Shown here: one piece after another, positions 33,472-54,431 of the stretch | Numbering within the stretch: position 1 is the stretch's first letter | Layout of the letters: each line of letters begins with the position of its first letter | Assembly: GCA_002269645.1 (NCBI GenBank) | Contig: NIVC01001754.1 | Coordinates: forward strand, 54,081-118,080 | Length of the DNA: 64,000 bases | Source of the DNA: Macrostomum lignano | Lineage: Eukaryota | Direction of reading: 5' to 3' | Notes under the pieces: model-generated | Database searches by the model: none | Told to the model about the DNA's origin: nothing | What the model saw: only the letters and a program-made list of their open reading frames with translations | Translations under genes and position numbers: made by a program

Positions 33472-34258
33472 AAAGAAGTCTCAGACTTGTGTACAACTAA
33501 AAAGTAGTTTGCGTCAATGTCAAGAGTCGAGGTAAGGATGCAATCTATAAATGAGCGAGACTTGGTTCAGAAAGTTCTCTGAGAAACCCCAGAAACTAAA
33601 CTGGCAGCTTAGACCAGGAAGCAGCGACTGCACTTTAGTGGTTGTTTTACTAAACGAATTCTTCCACAACAATTGATCGATGGTGATCGATGTTTTTAGA
33701 TCAAACTAGCAATCAGCGCCCCCCCCGTAAGGGGTATCGCAACAAAGAATGGAATATTTTTTTGAATAAACTAAATGTACCTTCTGAAATCTGCCATGAT
33801 ATCTTAGCAGTCCCCCCCTCGGCCGTAAGCCTTGGCTTTCAAGAAATCCCCCCCCGGGTAAGCCTTGACGTCTCGGTAATTCTACCCAAGAGCCACAGCA
33901 CAGTTTCACGTGACGCTTCTTTTATGTCTGACATGACGCTTCTTTTATGTCTGACATGACGCTTCTTTTATGTCTGACATGATGCTTATTTTATTTTTAG
34001 ATTTTTAGATTTTATTAACAGGTTGAAATGAAATGCAATCAGGTTTGTGTGAGGTTGCAGTTCAATATATTCACCTTGGTCGAGAGTTAAAACTGATACA
34101 GACGAGTCACTTTTGATATGACTCTCGTAAACATCATTGAAACCTCATTCCCAGCTAGCTGGTCTTTTGTTAAATCGGTGCATACTGAGGTCAACTGAAG
34201 GACCTGAGAGGATCGTCAACTAGGAGCGTAGTCTTTTGAGTCAGCTGTTCATGGAAAC

Positions 34259-34683
34259 CTATAGAACCAGCATCTCGACATCCTTCAGCGAGTAATGAAA
34301 TCCATAGTTGAAACTCCAAATGACGCCAATGGCGAAGGGACCTCCGATGGCTTCCGAATAACTCTTGTATGGTCCATTCAGGTGCGATTTGAAGCAGCTC
34401 TTGTACCACCAGGCTCCGATATAAACTATAGCGCAGTTGCTCCCAGCTCTGGCATCGTGATCAGCGTCAAATGTGGTGAACTTTTGGTTGTTGCTGTAGA
34501 CCATGGAGTCGCCAACCCCGTCGCTGGCTGAGAAACCCGACACGGTCAGCCGGTAATTGTCGGACTCCGGACCTACGCTGAAGCTCGAGTACTCAGCCCA
34601 ACCTTCGTTGTCATTCCACAGCCTCATCAGAACCAGCAGCTTCCGTGAACCATTTTTGGTGAGCGCGTGTAGAGCATTCAGAC
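34259..34683 (-). CDS. PAN-like/fibrinogen-domain gene copy 1, exon 3 (FReD C-terminal part)
   Basis: GLNALHALT...EYSSFSVGPESDNYRLTVSGF...FTTFDADHD...NCA...GAWWYKSC...LNG. Acceptor CCCGCAG|GT, phase 1. Confidence 0.93.
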
Positions 34684-34799
34684 CTGCGGGTAGGGGGGGG
34701 GGCCACATACGATAACCCCAACCTGACTCTGACACAGAAATTTCCGAGCTAAAAACGTCATTAAATCGTCTAACACAAATTCAATTTACATGTAGCTCG

Positions 34800-35984
34800 T
34801 ATATAAAAACACCCCCTTGGGCTTCATGCCTGAGAAGACTCTCATCCCACATCTGGATTACATCCGTCGCGATCTTCAACACATCCTTGTGTAGGACTGG
34901 AAACCCCCACTCTCATTTTCAGGAAAGTCTTCAAATGTACCCTTCCGCCACGAGAGAGCCACCCACTGGACGTGGGCATCAACCGGAGAAGCCAGGGTAT
35001 TCACTGCTTCACTGGCGGATCCCTGTGTGACGGTCTCGCAGGCGCGGGCATTGCCATTTTCTACAAGCGCGAAGCGATCTTAGAAGAAGGTCTTCATCTT
35101 GGTGAGAATGTCTTGGTTTTTCAATCCCAAGTTGTAGCCATCAACCAGTGCGCCGAGTATTTTCACAGGGCTGGCATTAGCAGCTGTGACATAAACTTTT
35201 ACTCTGACAGCCAGGCCTTGTCTTCCATCAAGCTCTCAACCAAGTCAGTTTTAGACTGCTCCAAAAGCTTGCAGACCCTGGCGATTCTCAACAGGATCAA
35301 TGTTATCTGGACACCAGGTCATAGCAAAATCCTCGGCAACGAGCTGGTGGATCAACTCGCCAAGCGGGGTAGCATCCCGGGTGGAGCGCAAAGCTAAGTC
35401 AAGTTACCTTCTCCGAAGTCATCAGCCAACTTCAATTCAATTCAAGATTGGATGAACCGCCAGCACCAGGTTCACTGGAATAGCTGCTCCGAATAATGGC
35501 AAACACGAAAGGCTTTGCCTGCCATAAACCGGAAAGTATCCGAATATCTAATCTCCTTAAGGAAAACTGACCTCAGGGAGATGTGCATGGTCATCACAGG
35601 CCATGGGTTTTTCCAGAGACATATTTCACTGCAAAATGGTTGCTCCCCCATCTGCCCATTCTGTGATTTAAGGAGGAAACCTCGGCGCACCACGTCACCT
35701 TCTGCCCTCACTTCAACGACGCGCGGAGACGTCACCTCGGTCACCCGCTAAGGCTTGACGAGCTCACCACTCCGGACCGGATCCGTGACCTGCGCGCATT
35801 CGTTCAGGATTCTGGACGGATGAAGATCTCAAACGCCACTCTTGCGAGCTCTTCCGCTGCTGGCGAGGGTGGGCGCAGCCCCAAGGCAAAAGTTTTTAGC
35901 TTGGGGTTGCGATAGGGGCATCGCGGCCTAATCGCGGCATACTGCCCCCCTCAGTAGTAAGTAAGTACGAGCATACGAGTAAGT
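34800..35984 (+). mobile_element. 5'-truncated, decayed Loa/R1-like LINE (RNase H + CCHC + 3' tail) in intron 2 of copy 1
   Basis: RNase H remnant ([44 protein letters not shown]), then GHGFF...CPFC and an AGTAAGTAAGT tail. Contains stops and frameshifts; left boundary approximate. Confidence 0.85.
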
Positions 35985-36215
35985 ATGTTTAAACAAATTT
36001 CAAGCTCACTAAAGTTCCAACTTTTCAAGATGTTCAATTTTATAGTTTTCGACGATGTAATTGCATTTCAAGTTGCTTAAATAGCCCTTACGTCTTTTGA
36101 ATTTTACAAAGATTTGATTAACAGTAATAACGATTCATTGAGATGTTAATTCTAAACTATTTCGGCCACCATAGCCTGCAATATTAACGAATACAGCACA
36201 TTACAAGCCAATTAC

Positions 36216-36339
36216 CAATCCAGTAGTTGCCATCGGGTCCCTCGCCAAAGCCGGTTTGGTACTGCGACCAGTTGCGGTAGAAATCCACCGAATCCGACAC
36301 CCTGCGCTGAATCGTAGTCCAACAGTCAGTTTTGCTAGT
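36216..36339 (-). CDS. FReD gene copy 1, exon 2
   Basis: [42 protein letters not shown]; CGCAG| acceptor, G|GTAATT donor; 124 nt. Confidence 0.92.
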
Positions 36340-36774
36340 CTGCGTGACGTAGAGCAATCATCATAGATTAATTCTACCCTTTCGTGACTTGAATACGAGA
36401 GCTGCTTCTAACCCTGCTTTAACAGTAGCAAGACTACGTTATTTTTCCCCATGGGGAAAGACCACGGGGTGTACTACAAATACACACGACCCATTTCACG
36501 ATAGCTCGCAAACCGAATTACCGATTATCGTAAAATTCCACCATATGAATCAAAATTTTCCGCCCTTTCCGAAATTTTAGCCCGTGTTCTGCATTTTATT
36601 GGCTATTGCTTGAATATTTTGGCGATCCAGACAAAGAAAAATGTGAGCATTCGAAATGCACCCCCATGGTCTTTCTACTGTTAACTACTGAATGTTTCTA
36701 AGATTTAAAAACAAACAGGCGGACAGGCGGTCAAACAAAAAGGTAGGTACCAACCTAGACACCAACCCAGATAC

Positions 36775-37180
<406 letters not shown>

Positions 37181-37186
37181 GTATCT

Positions 37187-37199
37187 CTCACTCACCCAC
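37187..37199. repeat. Target-site duplication, left copy (CTCACTCACCCAC)
   Basis: Identical 13-mer at 42998-43010; present only once at the homologous site in gene copies 2 and 3. Confidence 0.92.
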
Positions 37200-37314
37200 T
37201 TGACTTACTTGACTTAGCTGCAGGGGGCGTCCGGCGGATGCAGCGAGGAGGCGGAGGAGACCGCCCATTCCGCTAGCCCCTGGCGACCAACGACTTCCGT
37301 TGAAGTGGTGTCGC

Positions 37315-40300
37315 TCAGGGGGACCCGTCGGTCTCGCCTGCAGCGCGGTCCTCCTCACCGACGGTGGGGAAGAAATCAGCTCGTCCGGTGTCCCTGAGGT
37401 ACCGGGCGAGCAGTGGGATGCTCTCGGGCCTGCAAACGTCGGAGAGAACCGGGTTTGGCCCGAGGTGAGTAAGCCTGGCCCTGGTGAAAACCGGGCAGTG
37501 GCAGATAAAATGCTCGGCGTTTTCACTGCCTGAGCGGCAGAAGGGGCACCGCTCCTCGGGTACTTGGCCCTGAAGGAAGCGGTGGCGAGAGAAGCAGCCA
37601 TGCCCGGAGAGGGCCATGCTAACTGCTCTGAGGTCTCTGCGGTTGAGCCTGAGCAGGGCTCTACGCAGGAGAGGAGAGGGACAGGGGACGGCAGCACGGG
37701 ATTGCCTACAATTCCGGGTGTCGTGCCACCTGCGGAGATGCTCGGAGTCAGCCCAGCGCTTAACGCGGGAATTGATCACCGAGGCGGGGATGGGGGCACC
37801 CGGGCCCGGCCCCAATAGCGCGCCGGCGGAGCCAGCCTTGGCCAGCAGGTCAGCGCGCTCGTTGCCGAGGAAGCCGGCGTGGCCCGGGATCCATCTGAGC
37901 TCCACCTGGTTGCCTAGCGCAAGCCCGTTGAGCTGGGTGTTGCAGTCCAGGACGGACCTGGAGCTGGCGGTGCTGCGGCAGAGGGCCCGAAGGGCTGCTT
38001 GGCTGTCAGAGTGAAAAATAAATTTCCGGCCGCTAAGCTGCCTTCGGCGCAGCTCTGCCGCGCAGGAGCTGATGGCAAGCACCTCGCTCTGAAAAACACT
38101 GGAGTTGAGCCCAGTGTGCTGGGAGTAGCTCCACACCACTTCTCCCTTGAAGAAGACGCAAGCTCCGAAGCCTGAAAGACCATGCCTCATAGAGCCGTCA
38201 GTGTAACAGTGGACTTCAGAGTCGCTCCAGCTGTCACTCGCCTCGTGTCGAGGCTGAATGGTGACCTTATACCTTTGGCTCAGGAGAAGGGTGGCTGGGA
38301 TCGAGTCCGTGAGGATGTTGAGCCCGCCACACTCCTCCAGAGCCTTGAGGCAGAGGTCAGAGTGCGGGATAAGCGACCGCTTCTTAAAGGCCCGCACTTT
38401 CTTGAAGGCCACCCCAGCATCCAGAAGACGCCGGGTGCTCTTCGCCGCCTCTCCTTTGATATAAATATCCAAAGGAGGGGCGCAGAGGAAGGCATTCATG
38501 CCTTCAAAAGGAGTAGAGGGTGGAGCGCCCATAGTCATGCGGCAGGCTCTGCCCTGGATTTTGTAGAGAGCGTCGAGGTTGCTCTTGACGCTCAGGCCGC
38601 TAGCCCACACGAGGCTGGCGTAACTGATCGAGGGGCGGATGATGGCAGTGTAAATCCACCACAGCTTCCTGGGGGTGAGCCCCCAGGTGGTGCCCACGGC
38701 GCGCCTGATCTGAGCCAGTACAGCCAGGGCTTTTTTGGCTTTAGTTTGAATGTGCGGAGTCCAGTTAAGCCTGTGGTCCAGAGTGAGGCCCAGGCAGCGG
38801 ACCTGCTTCTCCATGGAAATATTCTTTCCATAGAGGGTGAGGGGCTTAATGGTCCAGAGCAGTTTGTTGGTAAACATGACTGCTGTGGTTTTCGACTCTG
38901 AGAGTCTAAGGCCACATTGGTCTGCCCAACGCTCCGCTCGTCCCAGAAAGCCCTGCAGAAGGTCTCTGATGGTATCAACCGAGGGGCCCGCGCATATCGC
39001 GGTCACATCATCGGCATAGCCCACCTTGAGAATGGGGTCGTGGAGATCACTGCAAAGCAACTCATCCATGACCATGTTCCAGAGAACGGGGGTGAGAACG
39101 CCGCCCTGGGGGCCCCCTTTCAGGACAGGCACCGAAAGAGAGCTGCCGCTCAGGTGGGCCACAACAGTGCGGTTTCGGATCATGAACATGATCCACCGGA
39201 CAAGGTGAGGGTGCGTGGCCCTGGATTCCAGGGCTCTGCAAAAGGCCTCAAGATGACGTTGTCGAAGGCCCCCTCAATGTCCAGGAAAAGCGAGAGGGCA
39301 AAGCCGCTGCCAAGAACGGCCCTCTCCAGGAAGTCAACAATGACATGGAGAGCACTCTCGGTTGACCTGCCCGCGCGGAAGGCGTGCTGGTTCTGCGAGA
39401 GTGGGAAGCGCTTCAGCTCGACCGAAAGTAGGCGCCAAAGCACCAGTCTCTCGAGGAGCTTGAGGCAGAAAGAAGTGAGGCTGATAGGCCTGAAGGCCTT
39501 CACCGATTGGTAGTCGCTCTTTCCAGGCTTGGGATAAAGACCACCCGGGCCTCTCTCCATGCAACTGGTACATAGCCCAGCTCCATACAAGCTCGAAGGA
39601 GACGACAGAGCAGGTCCAGGAAGCGGTGGTTTTTCACCGCCTCGTGCAAGAACGCTGGGTAGATGCCGTCGGGCCCAGGCGCCTTGAACGGGTTAAAGGA
39701 CCTTGCCGCTCTAATAATGCGGTCTTTGGTGATCATAGACTTTGCTAGGCCTTGCCCTCCCACTGTGTGGTCGGGCGGGCCCTGCTGAGTCGGAGATTTA
39801 GGGAAAAAACTGTTGAGCATGAGCTCTAGAGTCTCTTCCGAACTCTCTGTGACCGAGCCGTCAGGTCTCTTCACAACAGAGAGTTTAGAAAAACGGTCAT
39901 TAGTGAGTGCCTTAACCACGCGGGCTACGGGGCGAGAGCCCTCAAGCCCTTCGCAATATTGGCGCCACTTGGCCGTCTTGGCCCTTCTGACTTGGCCCTT
40001 AAACTCGTGGATCGCACGGGTATAGGCCTCTCTGTCAGATGGGTCTTTGGTTTTGAGCGCTCGCCTTTGGAGGGTCCTGGCTCGGCGCCGAAGGGCCCCG
40101 AGCTCTGGGTTCCACCAGGGAGCAGATTTCTTGCCTTTATAGGCCGTTAGGGGGCAGGCTGCTTCAAAGGCAGTGGTGATCGCCCCGCCCAGGGAGGAGG
40201 CGAGATCGTCCACCACCTGGCAGTCAGAGAGGTCACTGGGGGGTCAAGATCCCGAAGGCCGCGGCTCAGCTTCGAGCCAAAGGCGGCCCAATCGGTGTTT

Positions 40301-41016
40301 CTGACGTTCCGACTCCAAGTGACCTTAGGCTTTTGCTTGGTCGGCCCAATGCAAAAGCGGATAAAGCGGTGGTCCGAGAGCGAGTCCTCGTCCCACACTC
40401 GCCAGCCCGTAACTGCGGAAAGCAGTCCGGGTGAGGCGATGGTGGTGTCGATGACTTCGGCCCACCGCCCATTATTGAACGTTGGTGCATTGCCCACGTT
40501 ACAGAAGTTGAGGTTAGTGCTGCTGACATAGGCCAGCAGCTCCTCGCCTCTGCTATTGATGTTCTTGCTGCCCCAATGCAGGTGGTGTGCGTTCACATCC
40601 CCTGCAATGAGCAGCTCGAACCGATGGGACGCAGCATAGTCAGTAAGGTTGACTAACGCGTCGCAGACAACTGGGGCATCGCCCGGGAAATAGGCAGAAG
40701 CTACCAGCACAGGTTTATTGGGAATGAGGTTATTGATTTGAACAACACAGATGTCCCCAGTCGAGAGATCAGGTCTCATCCATGCCTCAAAAGCTTTTGC
40801 AGCAAAGACCAGAGATCTTGGGCGAGGCTGAGAGCCCGCCATGCAAAAACAGTGGTAGCCAGATGGCACATTATTTGGCTTACCTTTAGTCATCCAGGGC
40901 TCCTGTACGAAGACCAGGCCCGGAAGCTGTTGCTCTGCCGTGCGCATCAGGTTGACCGACGCCGCCACGCAGTGCTGGGTGTTGATCTGCAGACACCAGG
41001 TAGTCGTTGGCATCAT
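37315..41016 (-). CDS. LINE ORF2 (APE endonuclease, reverse transcriptase, RNase H, zinc knuckle), split by three -1 frameshifts
   Basis: APE motifs LQINTQH, GDVNAHH, LSDH; RT motifs FRPISL, DIEGAFD, PQGG, YADD; RNase H motifs YTDGS, SDSQAA, WIPGH, GNERAD; CPFC...H...C. Confidence 0.93.
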
Positions 41017-42533
41017 TGCAGATCGGATGTTGCAGCCGCCAGGAGTTCCTCCTCCTCCTCGGCGCTCACCGGCTTCGGGTCGGGGTCGCCGGTGTCCATG
41101 GGCTCTTCTTCAGCAAAAGGCCCCCGATTGGCCGGAAGGCAGTAGGCAGCGTTCGCCGCCCTTTGCCCACCATCCATGGGGTCCTCCGCCTCAGATTGGC
41201 CCAATGCCCTGGAGCAGCCAGCCGCCTGGGCAGGCGGGTCCGTCTCCAGTCGGCCCTGCCCCGAGGGGTTGGGCCCAGCTGGGACGTCCCCACCCTCCCT
41301 GGACGAACTGGTGCGCCTAGGCGTCCCGGCGACCTCTCGCCTCAGCTGGGAGATTTTGGCGGTACGGACTGCCTCAGCTGCACGCTGGTACAGGCCGCGC
41401 CGCTTGGTGCTACGCGCCGGGCGTCGGTCGCCTCCGCCCTCAGCAGCGCGCTCAGCTTTGCCCGCGCGGCCGTGCTGCCGGGCAGAACGGTTTGCTTTGG
41501 CAGTCTGAGCAGAGGCTTGCGCCTCGGCCCCGGCCGCCTCCGCATCCCGCCCGCCCTGCTCACTGCCACGGGGAGGGTCGGCCTCGTAGGAGCGGATGCG
41601 CAGCTTCCAAAGGCCGACGTTGATGAAGCTGCCGTGTGGATAACGCCTCATCCAGGCGTCCGACAGCCCCAGGATGGCTGTGAAGCCAGTGCCGTCGGTG
41701 CGCTTAAGGGTGTCATGCACCACTAGGCCCGCGGCGGGAAGCTCCCGGTTGACTGCTAGCAGTCCTTTCCGGAGCTCGTCAGCAGAGGTAACAACGCTCC
41801 TGGCCGGGACCCAGATTCGATGCCTCTTGGTCCGGGGGCGCTCGTCCTCTCTGCAGAAGGCTAGGTTGAGGTCCCAGCTCTGCTCGGGCAGCAGCTCAAG
41901 GAGCCGCCGACCCGAGTCAGCATCACTGGGCCAAATGAGAAGGCACGAGTCCCTCGTCGCATTCGAATGAATGTTCAGAGGCGTGCCCTTCAGAGTTTGC
42001 TTCCACAGGAGGCCATCAACGGCACTTCTCACCTGCTTCAGCTGATCGGGAGACAGGCGCGCGTCCTTTCCCAGGATGACAACCGCCGGTTGCCTCTTTG
42101 CCGCATCAGCGTAGGAGGCCCGGGGGTCAGTGGAGCTTTCTTCAGGTGGGCTGTCCACCCTCCCGGCTGCATCGGCCTCCCTATCCTGGGCAGGGGCTTC
42201 CGTGGGCTCGAGGCCCTCTTCCGCCACCGCCCCAGACTGGGAAGCTTCCGCTGCCGCGGGCCGTTGGCCCCTGGCACCGGTTTGGCTTCCGCCCTCCTTG
42301 GCCCGCCTCGCCTTGTTAAGTCGACGGCGGGCAGCTCCAGAGGTGGTGCTGCGTTTCTTAGCAGCTGGAGTAGCAGGTGTCTTCTCGGAGGCACCGCTCA
42401 GAGTTGGCTCCACGGGTCTCGCCGAGGCGTCCCCGATGGTAGCAGGTGGTATGGCCGAGGAGTCCACGGCCCCAGCCGAGGCCGGAGGCACTGTGTCATC
42501 CACAGCCGGTTTGTTACTTCGGTTAGAAGCCAT
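41013..42533 (-). CDS. LINE ORF1 (gag-like, no CCHC; central domain reminiscent of Loa-clade ORF1/DUF4780)
   Basis: Uninterrupted ORF of 506 aa from ATG 42533 (568 aa from 42719); basic/disordered termini; stop overlaps the ORF2 start. Confidence 0.88.
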   Translation of the reverse strand: MASNRSNKPAVDDTVPPASAGAVDSSAIPPATIGDASARPVEPTLSGASEKTPATPAAKKRSTTSGAARRRLNKARRAKEGGSQTGARGQRPAAAEASQSGAVAEEGLEPTEAPAQDREADAAGRVDSPPEESSTDPRASYADAAKRQPAVVILGKDARLSPDQLKQVRSAVDGLLWKQTLKGTPLNIHSNATRDSCLLIWPSDADSGRRLLELLPEQSWDLNLAFCREDERPRTKRHRIWVPARSVVTSADELRKGLLAVNRELPAAGLVVHDTLKRTDGTGFTAILGLSDAWMRRYPHGSFINVGLWKLRIRSYEADPPRGSEQGGRDAEAAGAEAQASAQTAKANRSARQHGRAGKAERAAEGGGDRRPARSTKRRGLYQRAAEAVRTAKISQLRREVAGTPRRTSSSREGGDVPAGPNPSGQGRLETDPPAQAAGCSRALGQSEAEDPMDGGQRAANAAYCLPANRGPFAEEEPMDTGDPDPKPVSAEEEEELLAAATSDLQ

Positions 42534-42761
42534 TGGCTGGAAGTAAAAAGGTGGGACTTCCTGCAGAACACAGGCAAAGAGCCGCAAGGCCGCAACCCCA
42601 AACCAAGCGGCAGGCCCCCAAAAAGCAAAATACCACCACCCAAAAGCGCAAGGGGAACCGTTAGCGACCAGACTACTCCCTGGCCAAGCGTCCATCAGCA
42701 CGGAGTTACACTGGGACATTAGAGGGTGCGTTTATATGGTCACACCAGGACCCGGCGCCAA

Positions 42762-42897
42762 CGAATTAGCTCGGCAAGGCCCGAGAGCCTGCCTTAACAC
42801 CCACGGGACGAGTACCCTTCGAAGTGCGCCTTGCAAGGTGAAAATCAGGAGACAGAGTCTCTTGAGCTATCAGCCGCCAGGGGAGGCAGGTGTGAGC
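42762..42897 (-). ncRNA. Putative HDV-like self-cleaving ribozyme in the LINE 5' UTR
   Basis: Manual fold: P2 CGAA/UUCG, P3 GGG/CCC, L3 UACUCGU, P1' GUGGGU, P1.1 GU pairing with AC, P4 hairpin, J4/2 GCUAA. Confidence 0.7.
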
Positions 42898-42997
42898 ATC
42901 GCTGGCTGGGATAAAGGCCATACCAGTCTCATACTGCACAGATAGTTCACCACGCCATTACGTGCAGGACCCGGGGTCCTGGGGGCAACAGCCCCGG

Positions 42998-43010
42998 CTC
43001 ACTCACCCAC
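42998..43010. repeat. Target-site duplication, right copy; includes the native exon-1 donor
   Basis: Minus strand reads GTGG|GTGAGTGAG. Confidence 0.92.
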
Positions 43011-43330
43011 ACTCGCTGAGCTCCCTTGTCCGCATTGCGGCACTTCCTGCAGTGGCTCAGGCCCAGGCGGCACCGGAAGCGGGTGCACCAGCCGGAACTG
43101 ACGTTGAACGCCACCAGCTGCACAGCGGAGTCGCCGACCGCGGCAGCCAGGCAGTCAACCTCAGTCGCTGCTGGCTGCGAGCTCACAGCCTCATAGTCGG
43201 CGATGCTCTCACGGCTCGACCACCAGTTTCGCTCTGATGAAGCGGCTTCGCAGTGGAGATGCTGAGCTGCAGTCAGTAGCAGCAGCAGCATCAGCAGCTG
43301 TAGTTGATGCCAAGCAACTTTAGGCGTCAT
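43007..43330 (-). CDS. FReD gene copy 1, exon 1 (signal peptide + PAN/apple-like Cys domain)
   Basis: [29 protein letters not shown] (hydrophobic leader), then ATEVDCL...[10 protein letters not shown]; TGG|GTGAGT donor, 324 nt, phase 0. Confidence 0.88.
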
Positions 43331-44414
43331 TTCTTTCGGTTGTTTTATCACGGATTTTGTGCGTCTAATCGAGACTTGAAGCTTTCAGCAGACAGAATTG
43401 AAACTGGAGCCAGCAGCTTCAGAAACCTGCTCTCTCTTACAAGCCAAAAATGCGGTACCCAGAACTAATGGATGACAAGAGGCAGGGGCACAAACGAAGT
43501 TGAGGAAGGCTTGAGACACTCAAGTTGTAACTTGTTTGCAGCAGCAGAATGGTTGCTACATCTAACGCTTGGAATGGGAGAATGGGTAAGATGGGGAAAT
43601 CCTAATGAGCTGAAAAGAGATGCATTTAGAATAGAAAGAATTGGCAAACCTTGGCAAGAATGGTAATGCATTTTTCATACTAACAAGCTGCTGGAACCCA
43701 TTCTGGAGACAAGGTCGGCGGTTGCCTCTGGAAACTCAGGAATCCGCCACTAACCAAATGCGCTAGCCTGTAAAAAGTGCAAATGCAAAGACTTCCCAGT
43801 ACAGGCATATTATTGCAAAGGTAAGCAAAAGTAAAGCAATTCCTTGTTTCTTTCTCACGTTTTCCACTGCCTTATGCAGAGTTAAATTGACAGAAAATGC
43901 AGTAATTTGAAATGTGTTTTATCAAATTAGATTTTCAGATACTTGACTGAAAAATACGCTAATGAAACTTTTATTTCTACTTAGTGAGTAGACAATTAGA
44001 AATACTTGTTGAAAAAAATTAGCTAGTAGGTAAGGAAGGAGGGTAAGGAGGAGAGTAAGGGTGGAGGGTATGAGAAAGAGTACTATCTTTCGCGAAAAAA
44101 TGCATTTTTCGGACGTTTGAGCTCATTAAACAAAGGAGCTCAGCAGACAAAGCGACCAGTGTTTTTTTGAATTATCGGGAATAAATACGAATATGAATTC
44201 GATTACCAAGAATTAAAATCTGACATAAGTCTGATCATGCATTATTTGTAATTTGTAAGTTATCATATTGCGGACATTGCTAAATTAAAGAGCGATTCTA
44301 TGTCACTGCCCAATATTTCAGAAGATGAATAATAAAGCACAAAATATCTGCAATGTGCTTTGTTGAAGTCCCTGTCCCAATTATTCTGATTCGTGGCTCA
44401 ATGATCAATAACAC

Positions 44415-46970
44415 TATGACCCAATGACTCCATGACCAATGACTCCATGACCCAATGACTCCATGACCCAATGACTCCATGACTCAATGACTCCATGACC
44501 CAATGACTCCATGACCCAATGACTCTATGACTCAATGACTCCATGACCCAATGACTCCATGACCCAATGACTCTATGACCCAATGACTCCATGACCCAAT
44601 GACTCCATGACCAATGACTGCATGACAAAATGACTCCATGACCCAATGACTGAATGACCCAATGACTCCATGACCCAATGACTCCATGACTCAATGACTC
44701 CATGACCCAATGACTCCATGACCCAATGACTCTATGACTCAATGACTCCATGACCCAATGACTCCATGACCCAATGACTCTATGACCCAATGACTCCATG
44801 ACCCAATGACTCCATGACCAATGACTGCATGACAAAATGACTCCATGACCCAATGACTGAATGACCCAATGACTCCATGACTTAATGACTCCAGGACTTA
44901 ATGACTAAATGGCCCAATGACTCTATGACCCAATGACTCTATGACCCAATGACTGCATGACCCAATGACTCCATGACACAATGACTCCATGACTCAATGA
45001 CTGCATGACTCAATGACTCCATGACCCAATGACTGCATGACTCAATGTCTCCATGACCCAATGACTCCATGACCCAATGACTCCATGACCCAATGACTCC
45101 ATGACCCAATGACTCCATGACCCAATGACTCCATGACCCAATGACTCCATGAGCCAATGACTCCATGAGCCAATGACTCTATGAGCCAATGACTCCATGA
45201 CCCAATGACTCCATGAACCAATGACTCCATGACCCAATGACTCTATGAGCCAATGACTCCATGAGCCAATGACTCCATGAGCCAATGACTCTATGAGCCA
45301 ATGACTCCATGACCCAATGACTGAATGACTGAATGACTCTATGACCCAATGACTCCATGACCCAATGACTCCATGACCCAATGACTCCATGACCCAATGA
45401 CTCCATGACCCAATGACTCCATGACCCAATGACTGAATGACCCAATGACTCCATGACCCAATGACTCCATGACCCAATGACTCCATGACCCAATGACTCC
45501 ATGACCCAATGACTCCATGACCCAATGACTCCATGACCCAATGACTCCATGACCCAATGACTCCATGACCCAATGACTCCATGACCCAATGACTCCATGA
45601 CCCAATGACTGAATGACCCTATGACTCCATGACCCAATGACTCCATGACCCAATGACTCCATGACCCAATGACTCCATGACCCAATGACTCCATGACCCA
45701 ATGACTCCATGACCCAATGACTCCATGACCCAATGACTCCATGACCCAATGACTCCATGACCCAATGACTCCATGACCCAATGACTCCATGACCCAATGA
45801 CTCCATGACCCAATGACTCCATGACCCAATGACTCCATGACCCAATGACTCCATGACCCAATGACTGAATGAGCAAATGACTCCATGACCCAATGACTCC
45901 ATGACCCAATGACTCCATGACCCAATGACTCCATGACCCAATGACTCCATGACCCAATGACTCCATGACCCAATGACTCCATGACCCAATGACTCCATGA
46001 CCCAATGACTCCATGACCCAATGACTCCATGACCCAATGACTCCATGACCCAATGACTCCATGACCCAATGACTCCATGACCCAATGACTCCATGACCCA
46101 ATGACTCCATGACCCAATGACTCCATGACCCAATGACTCCATGACCCAATGACTGAATGAGCAATGACTCCATGACCCAATGACTCCATGACCCAATGAC
46201 TCCATGACCCAATGACTCCATGACCCAATGACTCCATGACCCAATGACTCCATGACCCAATGACTCCATGACCCAATGACTGAATGACCCAATGACTCCA
46301 TGACCCAATGACTCCATGACCCAATGACTCCATGACCCAATGACTCCATGACCCAATGACTCCATGACCCAATGACTCCATGACCCAATGACTCCATGAC
46401 CCAATGACTCCATGACCAATGACTCCATGACCCAATGACTCCATGACCCAATGACTCCATGACCCAATGACTCCATGACCCAATGACTCCATGACCCAAT
46501 GACTCCATGACCCAATGACTCCATGACCCAATGACTCCATGACCCAATGACTCCATGACCCAATGACTCCATGACCCAATGACTCCATGACCCAATGACT
46601 CCATGACCCAATGACTCCATGACCCAATGACTCCATGACCCAATGACTCCATGACCCAATGACTCCATGACCCAATGACTCCATGACCCAATGACTCCAT
46701 GACCCAATGACTCCATGACCCAATGACTCCATGACCTAATGACTCCATGACCCAATGACTCCATGACCCAATGACTCCATGACCCAATGACTCCATGACC
46801 CAATGACTCCATGACCCAATGACTCCATGACCCAATGACTCCATGACTCAATGACTCCATGACCCAATGACTCCATGACCCAATGACTCCATGAGCCAAC
46901 GACTCCATGAGCTAATGACTCCATGAGCCAATGACTCCATGACCCAATAACTCCATGAATGACCCCATGA
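44415..46970. repeat. 16-bp CCATGACCCAATGACT satellite (2.5 kb)
   Basis: About 160 units, between FReD copies 1 and 2. Confidence 0.98.
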
Positions 46971-47529
46971 CCCAATTGTGGTGTCTCGTATAGACTAACA
47001 CCGAAAAGCCGCGAGTAATCAGGCCCCGTAAAAATTCGTTCAAAAGTACGCTCCACTTAGGAGGTCGACCCGCGCTTATATTTCGCATCCAAGCAAGAAC
47101 TATTGGATTAAGCCAGGAAAATAGTAGTAGTTGGATTATATTGTAATAAGAGTGAAAATATTTGGATGCAAACTGAAAAAGGACAATTTAAAGGGGCAAA
47201 GTAGGGATAAGCTCGCATTATAGTGAGCACAGAAAGCCGAGTACTAATAGGATGCACTTATAAATATTTAAGGTATGTTTTAAATACGAAAGCTAATATA
47301 TATGTCTGACACTTCCACTGAATTAGGGTAAATAAAAATGTATGGTATAATCACGTATTCATATATTAATTGAAGTTTATTATTGTTCAAGAAAAAATTC
47401 GTCTTGAATCTTGACAAGCTAGGATTAAACACGGACATTGTATTCTCGGTGTTCACGGTCGCCTGATTGATCACTCTGTGCCAAGTGGCACCACTGTGAA
47501 TGTTGACTGTTATGAAATATTCATTCAAT

Positions 47530-48400
47530 TGAAGGATCTGAGAGGGAAGTCAACTGAAGGATCTGAGAGGGGGTCAACTGAAGGATCTGAGAGGGGGTCA
47601 ACTGAAGGATCTGAGAGGGGGTCAACTGAAGGATGTGAGAGGGGGTCAACTGAAGGATGTGATAGGGGGTCAACTAAAGGATGTGAGAGGGGGTCAGCTG
47701 AAGGATGTGAGAGGGGGTCAACTGAAGGATCTGAGAAGGGGTCAACTAAAGGATCTGAGAGGGGGTCAACTGAAGGACCTGAGAGGGGGTCAACTAAAGG
47801 ATCTGAGAGGGGGTCAACTGAAGGACCTGAGAGGGGGTCAACGGAAGGATCTGAGAGGGGGTCAACTGAAAATGATCTGAGAGGGGGTCAACTGAAAATG
47901 ATCTGAGAGGGGGTCAACTGAGGGATCTGAGGGGGAGTCAACTGAGGGATCTGAGAGGAGTCAACTGAGGGATCTGAGGGGGAGTCAACCGAGGGATTTG
48001 AGGGGGAGTCAACTGAGGGATCTGAGTGGGAGTCAACTGAGGGATCTGAGGGGAGTCAAGTGAGGGATCTGAGGGGGAGTCAAGTGAGGGATCTGAGGGG
48101 GAGTCAACTAAGGGATCTGAGGAGAAGTCAACTGAGGGATCTGAGGGGGAGTCAACTGAGGAATCTGAGGGGGAGTCAACTGAGGGATCTGAGGGGGAGT
48201 CAACTAAGGGATCTGAGGAGGAGTCAACTGAGGGATCTGAGGGGGAGTCAACTGAGGGATCTGAGGGGGAGTCAACTGAGGGATCTGAGGGGGAGTCAAC
48301 TGAGGGATCTGAGGGGGAGTCAACTGAGGGATCTGAGGGGGAGTCAACTGAGGGATCTGAGGGGAGTCAACTGAGGGATCTGAGGGGGAGTCAACTGATC
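47530..48400. repeat. 24-bp minisatellite (GGATCTGAGAGGGGGTCAACTGAA grading to GGGATCTGAGGGGGAGTCAACTGA)
   Basis: About 36 units directly 3' of the copy 2 stop codon. Confidence 0.96.
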
Positions 48401-48427
48401 TAGAGTCAACTGCTATTCGATATAAAT

Positions 48428-48855
48428 CTACAGAACCAGCATCTCAACCTCCTTCAGCGAGTAATGAAATCCATAGTTGTATCTCCAGATGATGCCAATG
48501 GCAAAGGGACCTCCGATGGCTTCCGAGTAATTTTTGTACGGTCCATTCAGGTGCGATTCAAAGCAGCTTTTGTACCACCAGGCTCCGATAAATCTTTTAG
48601 CGCAGTTGCTTCCAGCTCTCGCATCGTGATCAGCGTCGAATGTCGTGAACTGTTGGTTGTTGCTGTAGCCATCCAGGGAGTCGCCAATCCCGTCGCTGGC
48701 TGAGAAACCCGACACAGTCAGCCGGTAATTGTCGGACTCCGAACCGACGCTGAAGCTCGAGTACTCAGCCCAATCTTGGCTGTCATCCCACTGCCTCATC
48801 AGAATCAGCAGCTTCCGTGAGCGGCTTTGAGTGAGCGCGTGAAGAGTATTCAGAC
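48428..48855 (-). CDS. FReD gene copy 2, exon 3
   Basis: FReD motifs as in copy 1; CCCGTAG|GT acceptor; 428 nt. Confidence 0.94.
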
Positions 48856-49049
48856 CTACGGGCAGAGAGGCAATGTTCAGTGTCATAATTTTCGACGATG
48901 TAACAAAATTTCGAGTTTCTAAAATGAACTTTGGAATTTTATGAAGCTTTAATCAACAGATCATAAATATTCATAAGATCTTAATCCTTTCTATGTCGGC
49001 CAAAATATCTTTGAATATTCACGAATGCATCAATTTACAAGCTAATTAC

Positions 49050-49173
49050 CAATCCAGTAGTTGCCATCCGGTCCATCGCCAAAGCCGGTCTGGTATTGCG
49101 ACCAGTTGCGATAGAAGTCCACCGAATCCGACACTCTGCGCTGCACTGTGGTCCAGCATTTCGTGCTGGTTGT
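49050..49173 (-). CDS. FReD gene copy 2, exon 2
   Basis: [42 protein letters not shown]; TTTTCAG| acceptor, G|GTAATT donor. Confidence 0.93.
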
Positions 49174-49291
49174 CTGAAAAACCACAATCGCTGCTTTAAT
49201 TGTACATTAATTCTAACCTTATTCTTGAATAATAACAACCCCGCTGTGACTCTTCCGAAAGTTTTTAAAAGTTTAAAGCCGACAGAAGGAC

Positions 49292-49326
<35 letters not shown>

Positions 49327-49329
49327 CTA

Positions 49330-49402
<73 letters not shown>

Positions 49403-49406
49403 CTAT

Positions 49407-49500
<94 letters not shown>

Positions 49501-49503
49501 AAG

Positions 49504-49558
<55 letters not shown>

Positions 49559-49578
49559 AAGAGACGGACAGACAGACA
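49292..49578. repeat. (GACA)n in intron 1 of copy 2
   Basis: Read directly. Confidence 0.95.
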
Positions 49579-49593
49579 GTATCTCTCACTCAC

Positions 49594-49917
49594 CCAAACT
49601 CGCTGAGCTCCCTTATCCGCATTGCGGCACTTCCTGCAGTGGCTCAGGCCCAGGCGGCACCGGAAGCGGGTGCACCAGCCGGAACTGGCGTTGAACGCCA
49701 CCAGCTGCACAGCGGAGTCGCCGACCGCGGCAGCCAGGCAGTCAACCTCAGTCGCTGCTGGCTGCGAGCTCACAGCCTCATAGTCGGCGATGCTCTCACG
49801 GCTCGACCACCAGTTTCGCTCTGATGAAGCAGCTTCGCAGTGGAGATGCTCAGCTGCAGTCGGTAGCAGCAGCAGCATCAGCAGCTGTAGTTGATGCCAA
49901 GCAACTTTAGGCGTCAT
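49594..49917 (-). CDS. FReD gene copy 2, exon 1; spliced product is 291 aa
   Basis: 324+124+428 nt = 292 codons in one frame. Confidence 0.9.
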
Positions 49918-51002
49918 TGTTTCGGTTGTTTTATCACGGATTTTTTGTCGAGACTTTAAGCTGTTTGCAGACAGAATTGAAACTGGAGCCAGCAGCTTCA
50001 GAAACCTGCTCTCTCTTACAAGCCAAAAATGCGGTACCCAGAACTAACGGATGACAAGAGGCAGGGGCACAAACGAAGTTGGGGACGCAAATTGGAAGGC
50101 TTGAGACACTCAAGCTGTAACTTGTTTGCAGCAACAGAATGGTTGCTACAGCCAACCGATTGGAATAGGAGAATGGGTGAGATGGGGAAATCCTAATGAG
50201 CTGAAAGGAGATGCATTTAGAATAGAAAGAATTGGCAAATCTTGGCAAGAATGGTAATGCATTTTTCATAGCCACTAACAAGCTGCTGGAACCCATTCTG
50301 GAGACACAGTTGGCGCGGTTGCCTCTGTAAACTCAGGAATCCGCCACTACCAAATGCGCCAGCCTGTAAAAAGTGCAAATGCAAAGACTTCCCAGTACAG
50401 GCATATTGCAAAGGTAAGCAAAAGTAAAGCAATTCCTTGTTCCTTTCTCACGTCTTCCACTGCCTTATGCAGAGTTAAATTGACAGAAAATGCAGTAATT
50501 TGAAATGTGTTTTATCAAATAAGATTTTCAGATAGTTGACTGAAAAATACGCTAATGAAACTTTTATTTCTACTTAGTGAGTAGACAATTAGAAATACTT
50601 GTTGCAAAATTTAGCTAGTAGGTAAGGAAGGAGGGTGAAGGAGGAGAGTAAGGGTGGAGGGTATGAGAAAGAGTACTATCTTTCGCGAAAAAATGCATTT
50701 TTCGGACGTTTGAGCTCATTAAACAAAGGAGCTCAGCAGACAAAGCGACCAGTGTTTTTTTTGAATTATCGGGAATAAATACGAATATGAATTCGATTAC
50801 CAAGGATTAAAATCTGACATAAGTCTGATCATTATTTGTAATTTGTAAGTTATCATATTGCGGACATTGCTAAATTAAAGAGCGATTCTATGTCACTGCC
50901 CAATATTTCAGAAGATGAATAATAAAGCACAAATTATCTGCAATGTCCTTTGTTGAAGCCCCTGTCCCAATTATTCTGATTCGTGGCTCAATGATCAATA
51001 AC

Positions 51003-51780
51003 ACCATGACCCAATGACTCCATGACCCAATGACTCCATGACTCAATGACTCCATGACCCAATGACTCCATGACCCAATGACTCCATGACTCAATGACTC
51101 CATGACCCAATGACTCCATGACCCAATGACTCCATGACCCAATGACTCCATGACTCAATGACTCCATGACCCAATGAATCCATGACCCAATGACTCCATG
51201 ACTCAATGACTCCATGACCCAATGACTCCATGACTCAATGACTCCATGACCCAATGACTCCATGAATGACTCCATGACCCAATGACTCCATGACCCAATG
51301 ACTCCATGACCAAATCACTCCATGACCCAATGACTGCATGACTCAATGACTCCATGACCCAATGACTCCAGGACCCAATAACTCCATGACCCAATGACTC
51401 CATGACCCAATGACTCCATGACCCAATGAATCCATGACCCAATGACTCCATGACCCAATGACTCCATGACCCAATGACTCCATGACCCAATGACTCCATG
51501 ACCCAATGACTCCATGACTCAATGACTGCTTGACTCAATGACTCCATGACCCAATGACTCAATGACCCAATGACTCCATGACCCAATGACTCCATGACTC
51601 AATGACTCCATGACCCAATGACTCCATGACCCAATGACTCCATGACTCAATGACTCCATGACCCAATGACTCCATGACTCAATGACTCCATGACCCAATG
51701 ACTCCATGAATGACTCCATGACCCAATGACTCCATGAATGACTCCATGACCCAATGACTCCATGAATGACTCCATGACCA
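51003..51780. repeat. 16-bp CCATGACCCAATGACT satellite
   Basis: Between copies 2 and 3. Confidence 0.96.
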
Positions 51781-52334
51781 AATCGTGGTGTCTCGTATAG
51801 ACTAACACTGAAAAGCCGCGAGTAATCAGGCCCCGTAAAAATTCGTTCAAAAGTACGCTCCACTTAGGAGGTCGACCCGCGCTTATATTTCGCATCCAAG
51901 CAAGAACTATTGGATTTAGCCAGGAAAACAGTAGTAGTTGGATTATATTGTAATAAGAGTGAAAATATTTGGATGCAAACTGAAAAAGGACAATTTAAAG
52001 GAGCAAAGTAGGGATATGCTCGTATAATAGTGAGTACAGAAAGCAGAGTACTAATAGGATGCACTTATAAATATTTAAGGTATGCTTTAAATACGAAAGC
52101 TAATATATATGTCTGACACTTCCACTGAATTAGGGTAAATAAAAATGTATGGTATAATCACGTATTCATATATTAATTGAAGTTTATTATTGTTCAAGAA
52201 AAAATTCGTCTTGAATCTTGACAAGCTAGGATTAAACACGGACATTGTATTCTCGGTGTTCACGGTCGCCTGATTGATCACTCTGTGCCAAGTGGCACCA
52301 CTGTGAATGTTGACTGTTATGAAATATTCATTCA

Positions 52335-53195
52335 ATTGAAGGATCTGAGAGGGAAGTCAACTGAAGGATCTGAGAGGGGGTCAACTGAAGGATCTGAGAG
52401 GGGGTCAACTGAAGGATCTGAGAGGGGGGTCAACTGAAGGATGTGAGAGGGGGTCAACTGAAGGATGTGATAGGGGGTCAACTAAAGGATGTGAGAGGGG
52501 TCAGCTGAAGGATGTGAGAGGGGGTCAACTGAAGGATCTGAGAAGGGGTCAACTAAAGGATCTGAGAGGGGGTCAACTGAAGGACCTGAGAGGGGGTCAA
52601 CTAAAGGATCTGAGAGGGGGTCAACTGAAGGACCTGAGAGGGGGTCAACGGAAGGATCTGAGAGGGGGTCAACTGAAAATGATCTGAGAGGGGGTCAACT
52701 GAAAATGATCTGAGAGGGGGTCAACTGAGGGATCTGAGGGGGAGTCAACTGAGGGATCTGAGAGGAGTCAACTGAGGGATCTGAGGGGGAGTCAACCGAG
52801 GGATTTGAGGGGGAGTCAACTGAGGGATCTGAGTGGGAGTCAACTGAGGGATCTGAGGGGGAGTCAAGTGAGGGATCTGAGGGGGAGTCAAGTGAGGGAT
52901 CTGAGGGGGAGTCAACTAAGGGATCTGAGGAGAAGTCAACTGAGGGATCTGAGGGGGAGTCAACTGAGGAATCTGAGGGGGAGTCAACTGAGGGATCTGA
53001 GGGGGAGTCAACTGAGGGATCTGAGGGGGAGTCAACTGAGGGATCTGAGGGGGAGTCAACTGAGGGATCTGAGGGGGAGTCAACTGAGGGATCTGAGGGG
53101 GAGTCAACTGAGGGATCTGAGGGGGAGTCAACTGAGGGATCTGAGGGGGAGTCAACTGAGGGATCTGAGGGGGAGTCAACTGAGGGATCTGAGGG
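52335..53195. repeat. 24-bp minisatellite, duplicate of 47530-48400
   Basis: Same succession of variant units. Confidence 0.96.
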
Positions 53196-53224
53196 ATCTG
53201 AGTCAGCTAGCTGCTCATATAAAT

Positions 53225-53652: not shown

Positions 53653-53846
53653 CTACGGGCAGAGAGGCAATGTTCAGTGTCATAATTTTCGACGATGTAA
53701 CAAAATTTCGAGTTTCTAAAATGAACTTTGGAATTTTATGAAGCTTTAATCAACAGATCATAAATATTCATAAGATCTTAATCCTTTCTATGTCGGCCAA
53801 AATATCTTTGAATATTCACGAATGCATCAATTTACAAGCTAATTAC

Positions 53847-54087: not shown

Positions 54088-54417
<330 letters not shown>

Positions 54418-54431
54418 TATCTCTCACTCAC

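What the first reader, a model, noticed from the sequence alone, without database searches (positions are those of the whole stretch)
42762..42897. HDV-like ribozyme in the LINE 5' UTR with a covarying A-U pair in P1.1
On the minus strand the elements occur in the correct order: P2 CGAA (42821-18), P3 GGG (42817-15), L3 UACUCGU (42814-08), P3' CCC, P1' GUGGGU (42804-799), GU (42798-97), then UAA-GGCAGGC-loop-GCCUUGCC-GA as P4, J4/2 GCUAA with the putative catalytic C at 42769, and P2' UUCG (42765-62). L3 has AC where HDV has CC, and the partner is GU instead of GG, so P1.1 is preserved by covariation. There are two candidate P1 5' strands. GCUCAC (42897-92) pairs 6/6 with a G-U at the cleavage site and a J1/2 of about 70 nt. 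GCGCAC (42829-24) is compact but has one G-G mismatch. HDV-like ribozymes are established in R2, RTE, R1/SART and LOA (Baggins) elements; this instance appears unannotated.
Basis: partly seen in the sequence, partly recalled or inferred. Interest (0 to 1): 0.85.

Follow-up and report, generated by a model that had tools for sequence, protein, structure and literature searches.

The report
HDV-like ribozyme core in flatworm LINE
The 5' untranslated leader of a flatworm (Macrostomum lignano) LINE retrotransposon carries an RNA fold with the catalytic-core hallmarks of hepatitis-delta-like self-cleaving ribozymes; a distant relative keeps it through compensatory base changes, but its cleavage site cannot be fixed from sequence, so it is a probable new example of a known kind.

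Summary
It lies in the 464-nt 5' UTR of a LINE (APE, RT and RNase H domains) bounded by target-site duplications, in Macrostomum lignano.

On its own the pattern is at chance level:
- A loose HDV-type descriptor hits shuffled windows 0.68 times on average.
- Possible P1 partners occur at random frequency.
- The folding z-score is -0.47.
- Rfam finds nothing.

The support comes from comparison. A second element, whose ORF1 is 42% identical, keeps the core almost unchanged: P3, L3, P1', the P1.1 G, and a C followed by N-R-A. Its P2 and P4 keep pairing through seven double substitutions.

- The compact P1 (GCGCAC) is really the outer part of a long P2.
- The "covarying" A-U pair in P1.1 is a U/U opposition in the relative.
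- The cleavage site is unresolved, and this copy carries 100 nt upstream of the best P1 candidates. A ribozyme there would not have set this copy's 5' end.

Verdict: probable HDV-like ribozyme (about 0.55), a new member of a known kind, of moderate interest. The main rival is a non-cleaving structured leader.

The parts
37200..42997 (-). LINE element, about 5.8 kb. It comprises a 5' UTR, ORF1, and an ORF2 with APE, RT and RNase H domains that is split over at least 3 reading-frame segments. The 3' end is two tandem UAAGUCAAG units with no poly(A).
   Evidence: ORFs; Pfam Exo_endo_phos_2, RVT_1 and RNase_H; boundaries from the filled and empty sites.
37187..37199 (.). Target-site duplication, 3'-side copy: CTCACTCACCCA(C).
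   Evidence: The same 12-mer occurs once at each of the empty sites, 49585 and 54423.
42998..43010 (.). Target-site duplication, 5'-side copy. It fixes the 5' end of this copy at 42997.
42534..42997 (-). 5' UTR, 464 nt. The true ORF1 start is the ATG at 42533-42531. The longer ORF from 42719 reads through the leader.
   Evidence: ORF1 alignment with P0002 and P0003; P0001 comparison; sequence.
42892..42897 (-). P1 5'-strand candidate A, GCUCAC. It pairs 6/6 with GUGGGU, with G-U at the would-be cleavage site 5' of G42897. Duplex energy is -5.8 kcal/mol and J1/2 would be 61 nt.
   Evidence: This candidate is not distinguishable from chance.
42886..42891 (-). P1 5'-strand candidate B, ACCUGC. 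It pairs 6/6 with A-U at the cleavage site, at -5.2 kcal/mol. L002 has ACCCGG (5/6, mismatch at the top of the stem) at a similar distance from P2.
   Evidence: This candidate is not distinguishable from chance.
42818..42830 (-). P2 5' strand: outer GGCGC (42830-26), bulged A42825, C42824, a UU internal loop, and inner CGAA (42821-18).
   Evidence: MFE folds; pair counts (4 pairs changed on both sides).
42805..42817 (-). P3 (GGG 42817-15 with CCC 42807-05) and L3 (UACUCGU 42814-08). Only two L3 positions differ in L002 (UUCCCGU).
42797..42804 (-). P1' GUGGGU (42804-799) followed by the P1.1 3' strand GU (42798-97). C42812 pairs with G42798 in both elements. A42813-U42797 pairs in this copy only.
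   Evidence: The 17-mer CGUCCCGUGGGUGUUAA is identical in L002.
42770..42796 (-). P4 domain: closing pair U42796-G42770 (U-A in L002), a 2x2 internal loop, a 7-bp stem (42793-87 with 42780-73, U42777 bulged) and a 6-nt loop.
   Evidence: 3 pairs changed on both sides, 1 changed on one side.
42766..42769 (-). J4/2 CUAA, with the putative catalytic C at 42769 (CUGA in L002).
42754..42765 (-). P2 3' strand: UUCG (42765-62), UU, G42759 and GCGCC (42758-54).

Best explanation
The leader of this Macrostomum LINE encodes an HDV-like (delta-type) ribozyme core. Its parts are:
- a long P2 that stacks on an invariant 3-bp P3 with a 7-nt L3;
- an invariant G/U-only P1' strand;
- a one- or two-pair P1.1;
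- a P4 hairpin;
- a cytosine directly after P4, followed by N-R-A.

Inferred mechanism. An upstream purine-pyrimidine hexamer pairs with GUGGGU to form P1. C42769 and a bound metal ion then cut the RNA 5' of the first P1 nucleotide. The best guesses for that nucleotide are G42897 or A42891. This leaves a 5'-OH RNA that begins with the folded ribozyme.

By analogy with other LINE ribozymes, cleavage would free the element RNA from longer co-transcripts, or shape the leader for ORF1 expression.

Shown: the anatomy, its conservation and its covariation.
Inferred: catalysis, the identity of P1 and the biological role.

This particular copy is dead, because ORF2 is frame-shifted. Its P2 also carries a UU/UU internal loop that is paired in the relative, so it may cleave poorly even if the family's ribozyme is active.
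For: - Correct order and spacing of all elements.
- The relative L002 has only 42% ORF1 identity. It keeps GGG-U.C.CGU-CCC-GUGGGUGUUAA, and both elements have a C-N-R-A motif directly before P2'.
- In the two-sequence comparison, 25 pairs are 92% paired and 7 pairs changed on both sides. Registers slid by 1-3 columns give 0-1 such pairs.
- The positions described as rigidly conserved in R2 and HDV-like ribozymes are all present: the catalytic C, a constrained A in J4/2, the L3 C and G, and the P1.1 G (PMC3774820, PMC4870747).
- A descriptor hit falling by chance inside a 464-nt leader is expected about 0.0025 times (0.68 per 128 kb).
- Long J1/2 linkers are documented in active ribozymes, with P1 and P1' 23 to more than 700 nt apart (PMC3774820, PMC4908430).
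- An HDV-like ribozyme is already known in an APE/RT/RNase H LINE, L1Tc (PMC3185411, PMC4035085).
Against: - No Rfam HDV-family model matches the window or L002, even at E<=10.
- P1 cannot be identified. Partners occur at chance rate, there is no perfect one in L002 nt 1-80, and the two leaders do not align reliably upstream of P2 (p about 0.05).
- The copy, bounded by target-site duplications, carries 100 nt (42997-42898) 5' of the best P1 candidates. Its template RNA was therefore not cut there.
- The folding energy of the window core is unremarkable (z = -0.47).
- An alternative nested pairing of P1' with J4/2 exists: 5+2 bp in the L002 MFE and 3 bp in the window MFE.
- There are only two sequences, so the covariation statistics are thin.
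- A closer ORF1 relative, L001 (58% identity), has an unrelated leader with no such motif.
Confidence: 0.55

Rival explanations
1. The site is a conserved but non-cleaving structured leader element. It would be a three-way junction made of the P2 stem, a short hairpin and a long hairpin. It might serve as a protein-binding or packaging site, or as a translation or IRES-like module. In this reading the G/U-rich strand pairs with J4/2 or with downstream sequence rather than forming P1.
For: - In the MFE folds, GGUGU pairs with GCACU and GU with AU in L002, and GGU with GCU in the window. This buries the would-be catalytic C.
- The rest of the leader is also conserved and structured, with two further hairpins and 2 compensatory pairs.
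- No P1 can be pinned down.
- The fold sits 100-180 nt inside the element rather than at its 5' end.
- Rfam finds nothing.
Against: - A free-standing, invariant 3-bp hairpin with a 7-nt loop stacked directly on P2 is hard to explain without the P1.1 and L3 tertiary core.
- This reading needs coincidence to explain the simultaneous presence and conservation of the L3 U/C/G, the G after P1' and C-N-R-A before P2'.
- The alternative pairing is weak in the window copy (3 bp, two of them wobbles).
Confidence: 0.27
2. The ribozyme is real, but P1 is supplied from elsewhere. It could come from further up in the leader (AUCUGU at 42943) or from the host flank, in the style of R2 elements (ACCCGC at 43084, GCUCGC at 43182). 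Cleavage would then remove co-transcribed upstream sequence and would not cut inside the element.
For: - ACCCGC in the flank is the most stable partner (-8.1 kcal/mol, extendable to 8 bp).
- R2 ribozymes often cut in upstream target sequence, with P1 and P1' hundreds of nucleotides apart (PMC3774820).
- This would reconcile a ribozyme with a copy that keeps its first 100 nt.
- An invariant P1' is what R2 lineages show when the partner is constrained (PMC3774820).
Against: - There is no sign of site specificity. Two neighbouring units of the same 4.8-kb host repeat are empty.
- A flank-derived P1 would differ at each insertion.
- These candidates also occur at chance frequency.
- L002 shows no similarity to the window's flank.
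Confidence: 0.1
3. The match is a chance resemblance in GC-rich repeat DNA, with no RNA-level function.
For: Shuffled windows match the loose descriptor as often as the real one. Decoy motifs also hit. The z-score is -0.47.
Against: The 17-nt exact conservation, and 7 double compensatory changes between elements whose ORF1 proteins are only 42% identical, cannot be explained by chance.
Confidence: 0.03

Closest known systems
R2 (and R4/Dong) retrotransposon HDV-like ribozymes (Eickbush & Eickbush; PMC3774820)
   Same: - A delta-type core in the 5' leader of a non-LTR element.
- About 15 nt of P3, L3 and P1.1 highly conserved, while P2 and P4 vary.
- P1 of 6-7 bp that tolerates mismatches at the top of the stem.
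- J1/2 that may be very long.
- P2 of at least 5 bp, often with mismatches.
   Different: - R2 has a single ORF with a restriction-like endonuclease and is specific for the 28S gene. This element has ORF1 plus an APE/RT/RNase H ORF2 and sits in a macrosatellite with empty sister sites.
- R2 cleavage is at or upstream of the 5' junction. Here the best P1 candidates lie 100 nt inside the element.
L1Tc / ingi-clade Pr77 ribozyme of trypanosomatids (PMC3185411, PMC4035085)
   Same: An HDV-like ribozyme in the leader of an APE/RT/RNase H LINE, followed by further structured leader sequence.
   Different: L1TcRz occupies the first 77 nt and cuts at +1, so the promoter and ribozyme are retained in every copy. 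Here the core starts about 170 nt from the 5' end. I found no sequence similarity and did not test for it.
Large drz-Agam-2-type ribozymes with a structured J1/2 (P1.2) domain (PMC4908430)
   Same: A long insertion between P1 and P2, and an association with non-LTR elements.
   Different: In Agam-2 a P1.2 helix pinches P1 and P2 together. Here the 55-61-nt linker folds into small hairpins that L002 does not conserve.
Mammalian CPEB3 intronic ribozyme
   Same: From memory, not tested here: a 7-nt L3 beginning with U, with C at position 3 and G at position 6; a P1.1 made of one C-G pair plus a U/U opposition, with 3' strand GU; P4 directly following P1.1. The L002 version has the same P1.1 arrangement.
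   Different: CPEB3 is a compact, single-copy intronic ribozyme with a short J1/2. The Rfam CPEB3 model does not match this site.
Twister-variant ribozymes at the 5' end of Perere-3 LINEs in Schistosoma mansoni (PMC8501958)
   Same: A flatworm LINE with a self-cleaving ribozyme in its 5' region. The proposed role is release from co-transcripts and enabling translation.
   Different: It has a different ribozyme fold (twister). Its cleavage site abuts the target-site duplication, which contributes to its P1.

Membership tests
HDV-like (delta) self-cleaving ribozymes | Strand order P1-P2-P3-L3-P3'-P1'-P1.1-P4-J4/2-P2', with P2, P3 and P4 forming. | tested here: met
   for the order. Searches recover P2, P3 and P4 in the MFE of both elements. 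One search shows 92% of cells paired.
HDV-like (delta) self-cleaving ribozymes | A catalytic cytosine at the start of J4/2, followed by a conserved A (C-N-R-A). | tested here: met
   C42769-UAA in the window and C-UGA in L002. The C directly follows the closing pair of P4 (U-G in the window, U-A in L002)..
HDV-like (delta) self-cleaving ribozymes | A 3-bp P3 with an L3 of about 7 nt carrying the conserved C and G (and 5' U). | tested here: met
   GGG/CCC with UACUCGU in the window and UUCCCGU in L002. Conserved positions as given in PMC3774820.
HDV-like (delta) self-cleaving ribozymes | A P1.1 pseudoknot between L3 and the nucleotides just 3' of P1'. | tested here: met
   C42812-G42798 is present in both elements. 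The second pair is A-U in the window and unpaired (U/U) in L002. At least one pair is conserved.
HDV-like (delta) self-cleaving ribozymes | A P1 of 6-7 bp whose first nucleotide marks the cleavage site (usually a G-U pair). | tested here: inconclusive
   There are five perfect partners within 370 nt upstream, against about 5.8 expected. There is no perfect partner in L002 nt 1-80, only 5/6 matches. The upstream regions do not align reliably.
HDV-like (delta) self-cleaving ribozymes | Recognition by curated covariance models of the family (Rfam HDV, CPEB3, drz-Agam and similar). | tested here: not met
   No match at gathering score or at E<=10 for the window leader or for L002. These models are narrow and cannot represent the pseudoknot or a 60-nt J1/2, so this is weak negative evidence.
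HDV-like (delta) self-cleaving ribozymes | Mg2+-dependent site-specific self-scission that is abolished by mutating the catalytic C to U. | not testable with these tools
   This needs an in vitro transcription and cleavage assay.
LINE 5'-processing ribozymes (R2, L1Tc and Perere-3 type) | Cleavage at, or upstream of, the element's 5' terminus, so that the ribozyme defines the 5' end of new copies. | tested here: not met
   The target-site duplications place this copy's 5' end at 42997. That is 100-106 nt upstream of P1 candidates A and B and 180 nt upstream of P3. The feature could be met only if P1 lies in the flank, which is untestable here.

The most novel reading that the evidence does not exclude
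The ribozyme is active but deliberately internal. Its invariant P1' strand contains only G and U, so it can wobble-pair with about 1 in 64 hexamers. It would cut within the leader, or at variable upstream sites. This would split transcripts into two pools: uncut full-length RNA that serves as the retrotransposition template, and 5'-OH, ribozyme-headed RNA. That pool, or RNA spliced at the conserved acceptor just before the ORF1 AUG, would serve for protein expression. The ribozyme would then act as a switch between template and messenger rather than as a 5'-end trimmer.
Probability: 0.1. Interest if true: 0.6.

Novelty: new member of a known kind. Interest (0 to 1): 0.4.

Why it matters
HDV-like ribozymes are a recurrent tool of non-LTR retrotransposons, but their range across LINE clades and animal phyla is only partly mapped. 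The one flatworm LINE ribozyme with a shown role in retrotransposition that I found in the searchable literature is a twister variant (PMC8501958).

A delta-type ribozyme in a Macrostomum APE/RT/RNase H LINE would extend that map to a new host group and element type. It would also give a compact, testable RNA in a genetically tractable flatworm. Its internal position could show whether such ribozymes do more than trim 5' ends.

If it does not cleave, it is still a well-defined conserved leader structure. It would also be a warning that descriptor matches alone are at chance level in GC-rich repeats.

Tried and rejected
- **Rfam.** I scanned the whole window at gathering thresholds, the leader in two overlapping pieces at E<=10, and L001 and L002 at E<=10. 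There was no ribozyme hit of any class. This also removed my passing idea that the second conserved block (CUGAUG..., GGGAG) might be a hammerhead or a twister.
- **More relatives through ORF1.** Three protein searches gave only P0001-P0003, and the search with the conserved core returned nothing. Exact look-ups of three versions of the window ORF1 and of P0001 found nothing on record.
- **Scans with conserved leader words.** A 17-mer in metagenomes gave 13 hits. A 21-mer pattern in prokaryote genomes gave 5 hits. In both cases this is roughly the number I estimated for chance exact matches, and none has the motif context. A 22-mer from the second block found nothing in genomes or viral contigs, and the core pattern found nothing in viral contigs.
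- **The compact P1, GCGCAC.** Rejected in favour of the covarying outer P2 helix. A second compact option, CUUGC in the window and CUCGC in L002 just 5' of P2, gives only 5 bp, mostly wobbles, with a pyrimidine opposite U at the cleavage position. I judged it unlikely.
- **Positional homology of P1 candidates.** I tried to settle this by aligning the leaders upstream of P2. Different gap penalties gave incompatible alignments, and the best local alignment is only marginal (23/500 and 29/500 shuffles).
- **Site-specific, R2-like insertion.** The host is a 4.8-kb macrosatellite with two empty units in the window, so there is no evidence of specificity.
- **Thermodynamic support.** Not significant for the window copy.

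Full report
**Context.** The window comes from the flatworm Macrostomum lignano. A UniRef protein of that species (P0001) matches ORF1 at 506 of 507 residues.

On the minus strand lies a LINE of about 5.8 kb, from 42997 down to 37200. Two other units of the same roughly 4.8-kb host macrosatellite are uninterrupted at exactly this point (54423 and 49585). The insertion is flanked by a 12-13-bp duplication, CTCACTCACCCA(C).

The element has these parts:
- An intact ORF1.
- An ORF2 whose pieces carry APE endonuclease, reverse transcriptase and RNase H domains. It is split over reading-frame segments that start at 41016, 40216 and 39189, so this copy is dead.
- An ORF1 start at the ATG at 42533. 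This is where the two related ORF1 proteins begin, and it is the point where the UniRef model joins foreign exons. The leader is therefore 464 nt long (42997-42534).

**The observation.** As a bare pattern it is not special:
- My loose descriptor requires a 4-bp P2, a 3-bp P3, an L3 of the form U.C..G, a G after P1', a P4 of at least 4 bp, and C-N-R-A before P2'. It does not require P1. It finds this one site in the window.
- The same descriptor finds 0.68 sites per dinucleotide-shuffled window, and half of the shuffles have at least one.
- Decoys with A, G or U in place of the catalytic C hit 2, 1 and 1 times. I borrowed this control from PMC10879173.
- The MFE of the 77-nt core has z = -0.47.
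- Rfam reports nothing, at gathering scores or at E<=10.

**Comparative evidence.** ORF1 searches gave two relatives on short Logan contigs.

L001 has 58% ORF1 identity. Its leader is unrelated, is built from a tandem duplication, and has no motif hit.

L002 has 42% ORF1 identity. Its leader is homologous to the window's from the motif down to the start codon. In L002:
- The core reads CCUCAGA-GGG-UUCCCGU-CCC-GUGGGU-GU-UAA-UGCAGCU...AGCUGCA-GCA-C-UGA-UCUGAGG.
- The 17-mer CGUCCCGUGGGUGUUAA is identical to the window's.
- Both elements keep a C followed by N-R-A directly before P2'.
- P2 and P4 have different sequences but still pair.

I removed the unalignable L4 loops and the bulged U, then counted 25 pairs:
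- 92% of cells are paired.
- 7 pairs changed on both sides: 4 in P2 and 3 in P4.
- Registers slid by 1-3 columns give 0-1 such pairs and 35-52% pairing.

With two sequences the statistics are thin. Even so, the pattern is the one described for R2 ribozyme lineages: an almost invariant catalytic core flanked by covarying peripheral helices (PMC3774820).

1. GGCGC (42830-26) pairs with GCGCC (42758-54), and C42824 pairs with G42759, with A42825 bulged. L002 has GUCG, a bulged A and C at the same place, paired with CGGC and G. The "compact P1" GCGCAC is therefore the outer part of a long P2.
2. U42796 can pair with G42770 (U-A in L002). This closes the P4 domain and puts C42769 as the first nucleotide of J4/2, as in canonical members.
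3. The second P1.1 pair, A42813-U42797, is U opposite U in L002. Only the C-G pair is conserved.

**P1 and the cleavage site remain open.** P1' contains only G and U, so any R-Y-Y-Y-R-Y hexamer pairs with it.
- There are five perfect partners in the 370 nt upstream, against about 5.8 expected.
- L002 has only 80 nt upstream of P2 and no perfect partner in them. It has several 5/6 matches whose mismatch is at the top of the stem, which R2 ribozymes tolerate (PMC3774820). One is ACCCGG, 51 nt from P2. The window's ACCUGC lies 55 nt from P2.
- The two leaders cannot be aligned reliably upstream of P2, so positional homology cannot decide between the candidates.
- Long J1/2 regions are well documented (PMC3774820, PMC4908430). 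Distance is therefore not an objection.

**An awkward fact.** The target-site duplication fixes this copy's 5' end at 42997. That is 100-106 nt 5' of the two nearest P1 candidates. The RNA that made this copy was therefore not cut there.

Several explanations are possible:
- Cleavage is partial.
- Cleavage serves expression rather than trimming of the template.
- P1 lies in co-transcribed flank, in the style of R2.
- The fold does not cleave at all.

A nested alternative pairing of P1' with J4/2 appears in the MFE folds. It is strong in L002 and weak in the window. This is the concrete form of the non-catalytic rival.

**Weighing.** The following features favour a genuine delta-type ribozyme:
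- a 3-bp P3 with a 7-nt L3 stacked directly on P2;
- the conserved L3 U, C and G;
- the G that pairs with the L3 C;
- the cytosine after P4, with N-R-A following;
- their joint conservation in a distant relative;
- the location in a LINE leader, where a chance descriptor hit is expected only about 0.0025 times.

The precedent is ample: R2, R4 and Dong elements, other non-LTR elements, and L1Tc, which is also an APE/RT/RNase H element (PMC3774820, PMC4908430, PMC3185411, PMC4035085).

I put the probability at about 0.55 that the family's element self-cleaves. The probabilities for the rivals are:
- about 0.27 that it is a non-cleaving structured module;
- about 0.1 that it cleaves using a P1 elsewhere;
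- about 0.03 that it is chance.

I found no report of ribozymes in Macrostomum in the searchable literature. The flatworm LINE ribozyme with a demonstrated role is a twister variant (PMC8501958). The finding is a new member of a known kind, of moderate interest.

Noticed in passing
window 42537-42551 (minus strand); L002 about 424-437: A polypyrimidine tract plus CAG (CCUUUUUACUUCCAG in the window, CUCUCUCAUUGCAG in L002) lies three nucleotides before the ORF1 AUG in both elements. It looks like a 3' splice acceptor or a spliced-leader trans-splice acceptor. The UniRef gene model P0001 joins 319 unrelated N-terminal residues to ORF1 at exactly this point.
   Followed up: partly
window 42655-42727 (minus strand); L002 about 240-315: This is a second conserved block of the leader: CCCUCUAAUG, then two hairpins. 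The first hairpin has 2 compensatory pairs. The second, GGCCAGG-GAGUAG-UCUGGUC, is invariant. It has no Rfam match and its function is unknown.
   Followed up: partly
window 42534-42719 (minus strand): The mechanical 568-aa ORF1 starting at 42719 is an over-extension through the leader. Relatives and the UniRef model show the start at 42533 (506 aa).
   Followed up: yes
window 41013-41016 and 40930-41075 (minus strand); L002 2049-2130: The ORF1 stop and the ORF2 start overlap (AUGA) and sit inside a hairpin (z = -2.2). L002 has a very stable GC-rich hairpin at the same junction (-67.8 kcal/mol, z = -4.1), which Rfam weakly mistakes for miRNA precursors. This may be a signal for termination-reinitiation coupling.
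   Followed up: partly
window 42998-49584, 49585-54422, 54423 onward; also 34190-37198: The LINE sits in a tandem macrosatellite of about 4.8 kb. The macrosatellite is itself built of minisatellites: a 16-nt period around 44400-46976, a 24-nt period around 47525-48398, and (GACA)n at 49281-49579, 54086-54417 and 36777-37181. One of three units in the window is occupied.
   Followed up: partly
window 34909-35882 (plus strand): This is a fragment of a different LINE, covering the RNase H and C-terminal region. It is about 35% identical to the ORF2 C-terminus of the main element and is inserted in the same host repeat unit.
   Followed up: no
L001 1-334: The closer ORF1 relative (58% identity) has an unrelated leader made of two tandem copies of a unit of about 104 nt, with no HDV-like motif. 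The leader module has been exchanged within this LINE group.
   Followed up: partly
window 43004-43010 and 42798-42804 (minus strand): The upstream copy of the target-site duplication reads GUGGGUG on the element's sense strand. This is identical, not complementary, to P1' plus the first P1.1 nucleotide. It is probably coincidence and I did not pursue it.
   Followed up: no
window 37199-37217 (minus strand): The element ends in two tandem UAAGUCAAG units, with no poly(A) tail.
   Followed up: no
window 42898-42997 (minus strand): The first 100 nt of the element fold into consecutive hairpins, including GGGGC-UGUU-GCCCC and CAGGACC-CCG-GGUCCUG. GGGUCCUG recurs at 42752-42745, just 3' of P2. A long-range helix closing the whole ribozyme-like domain is therefore possible.
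   Followed up: no
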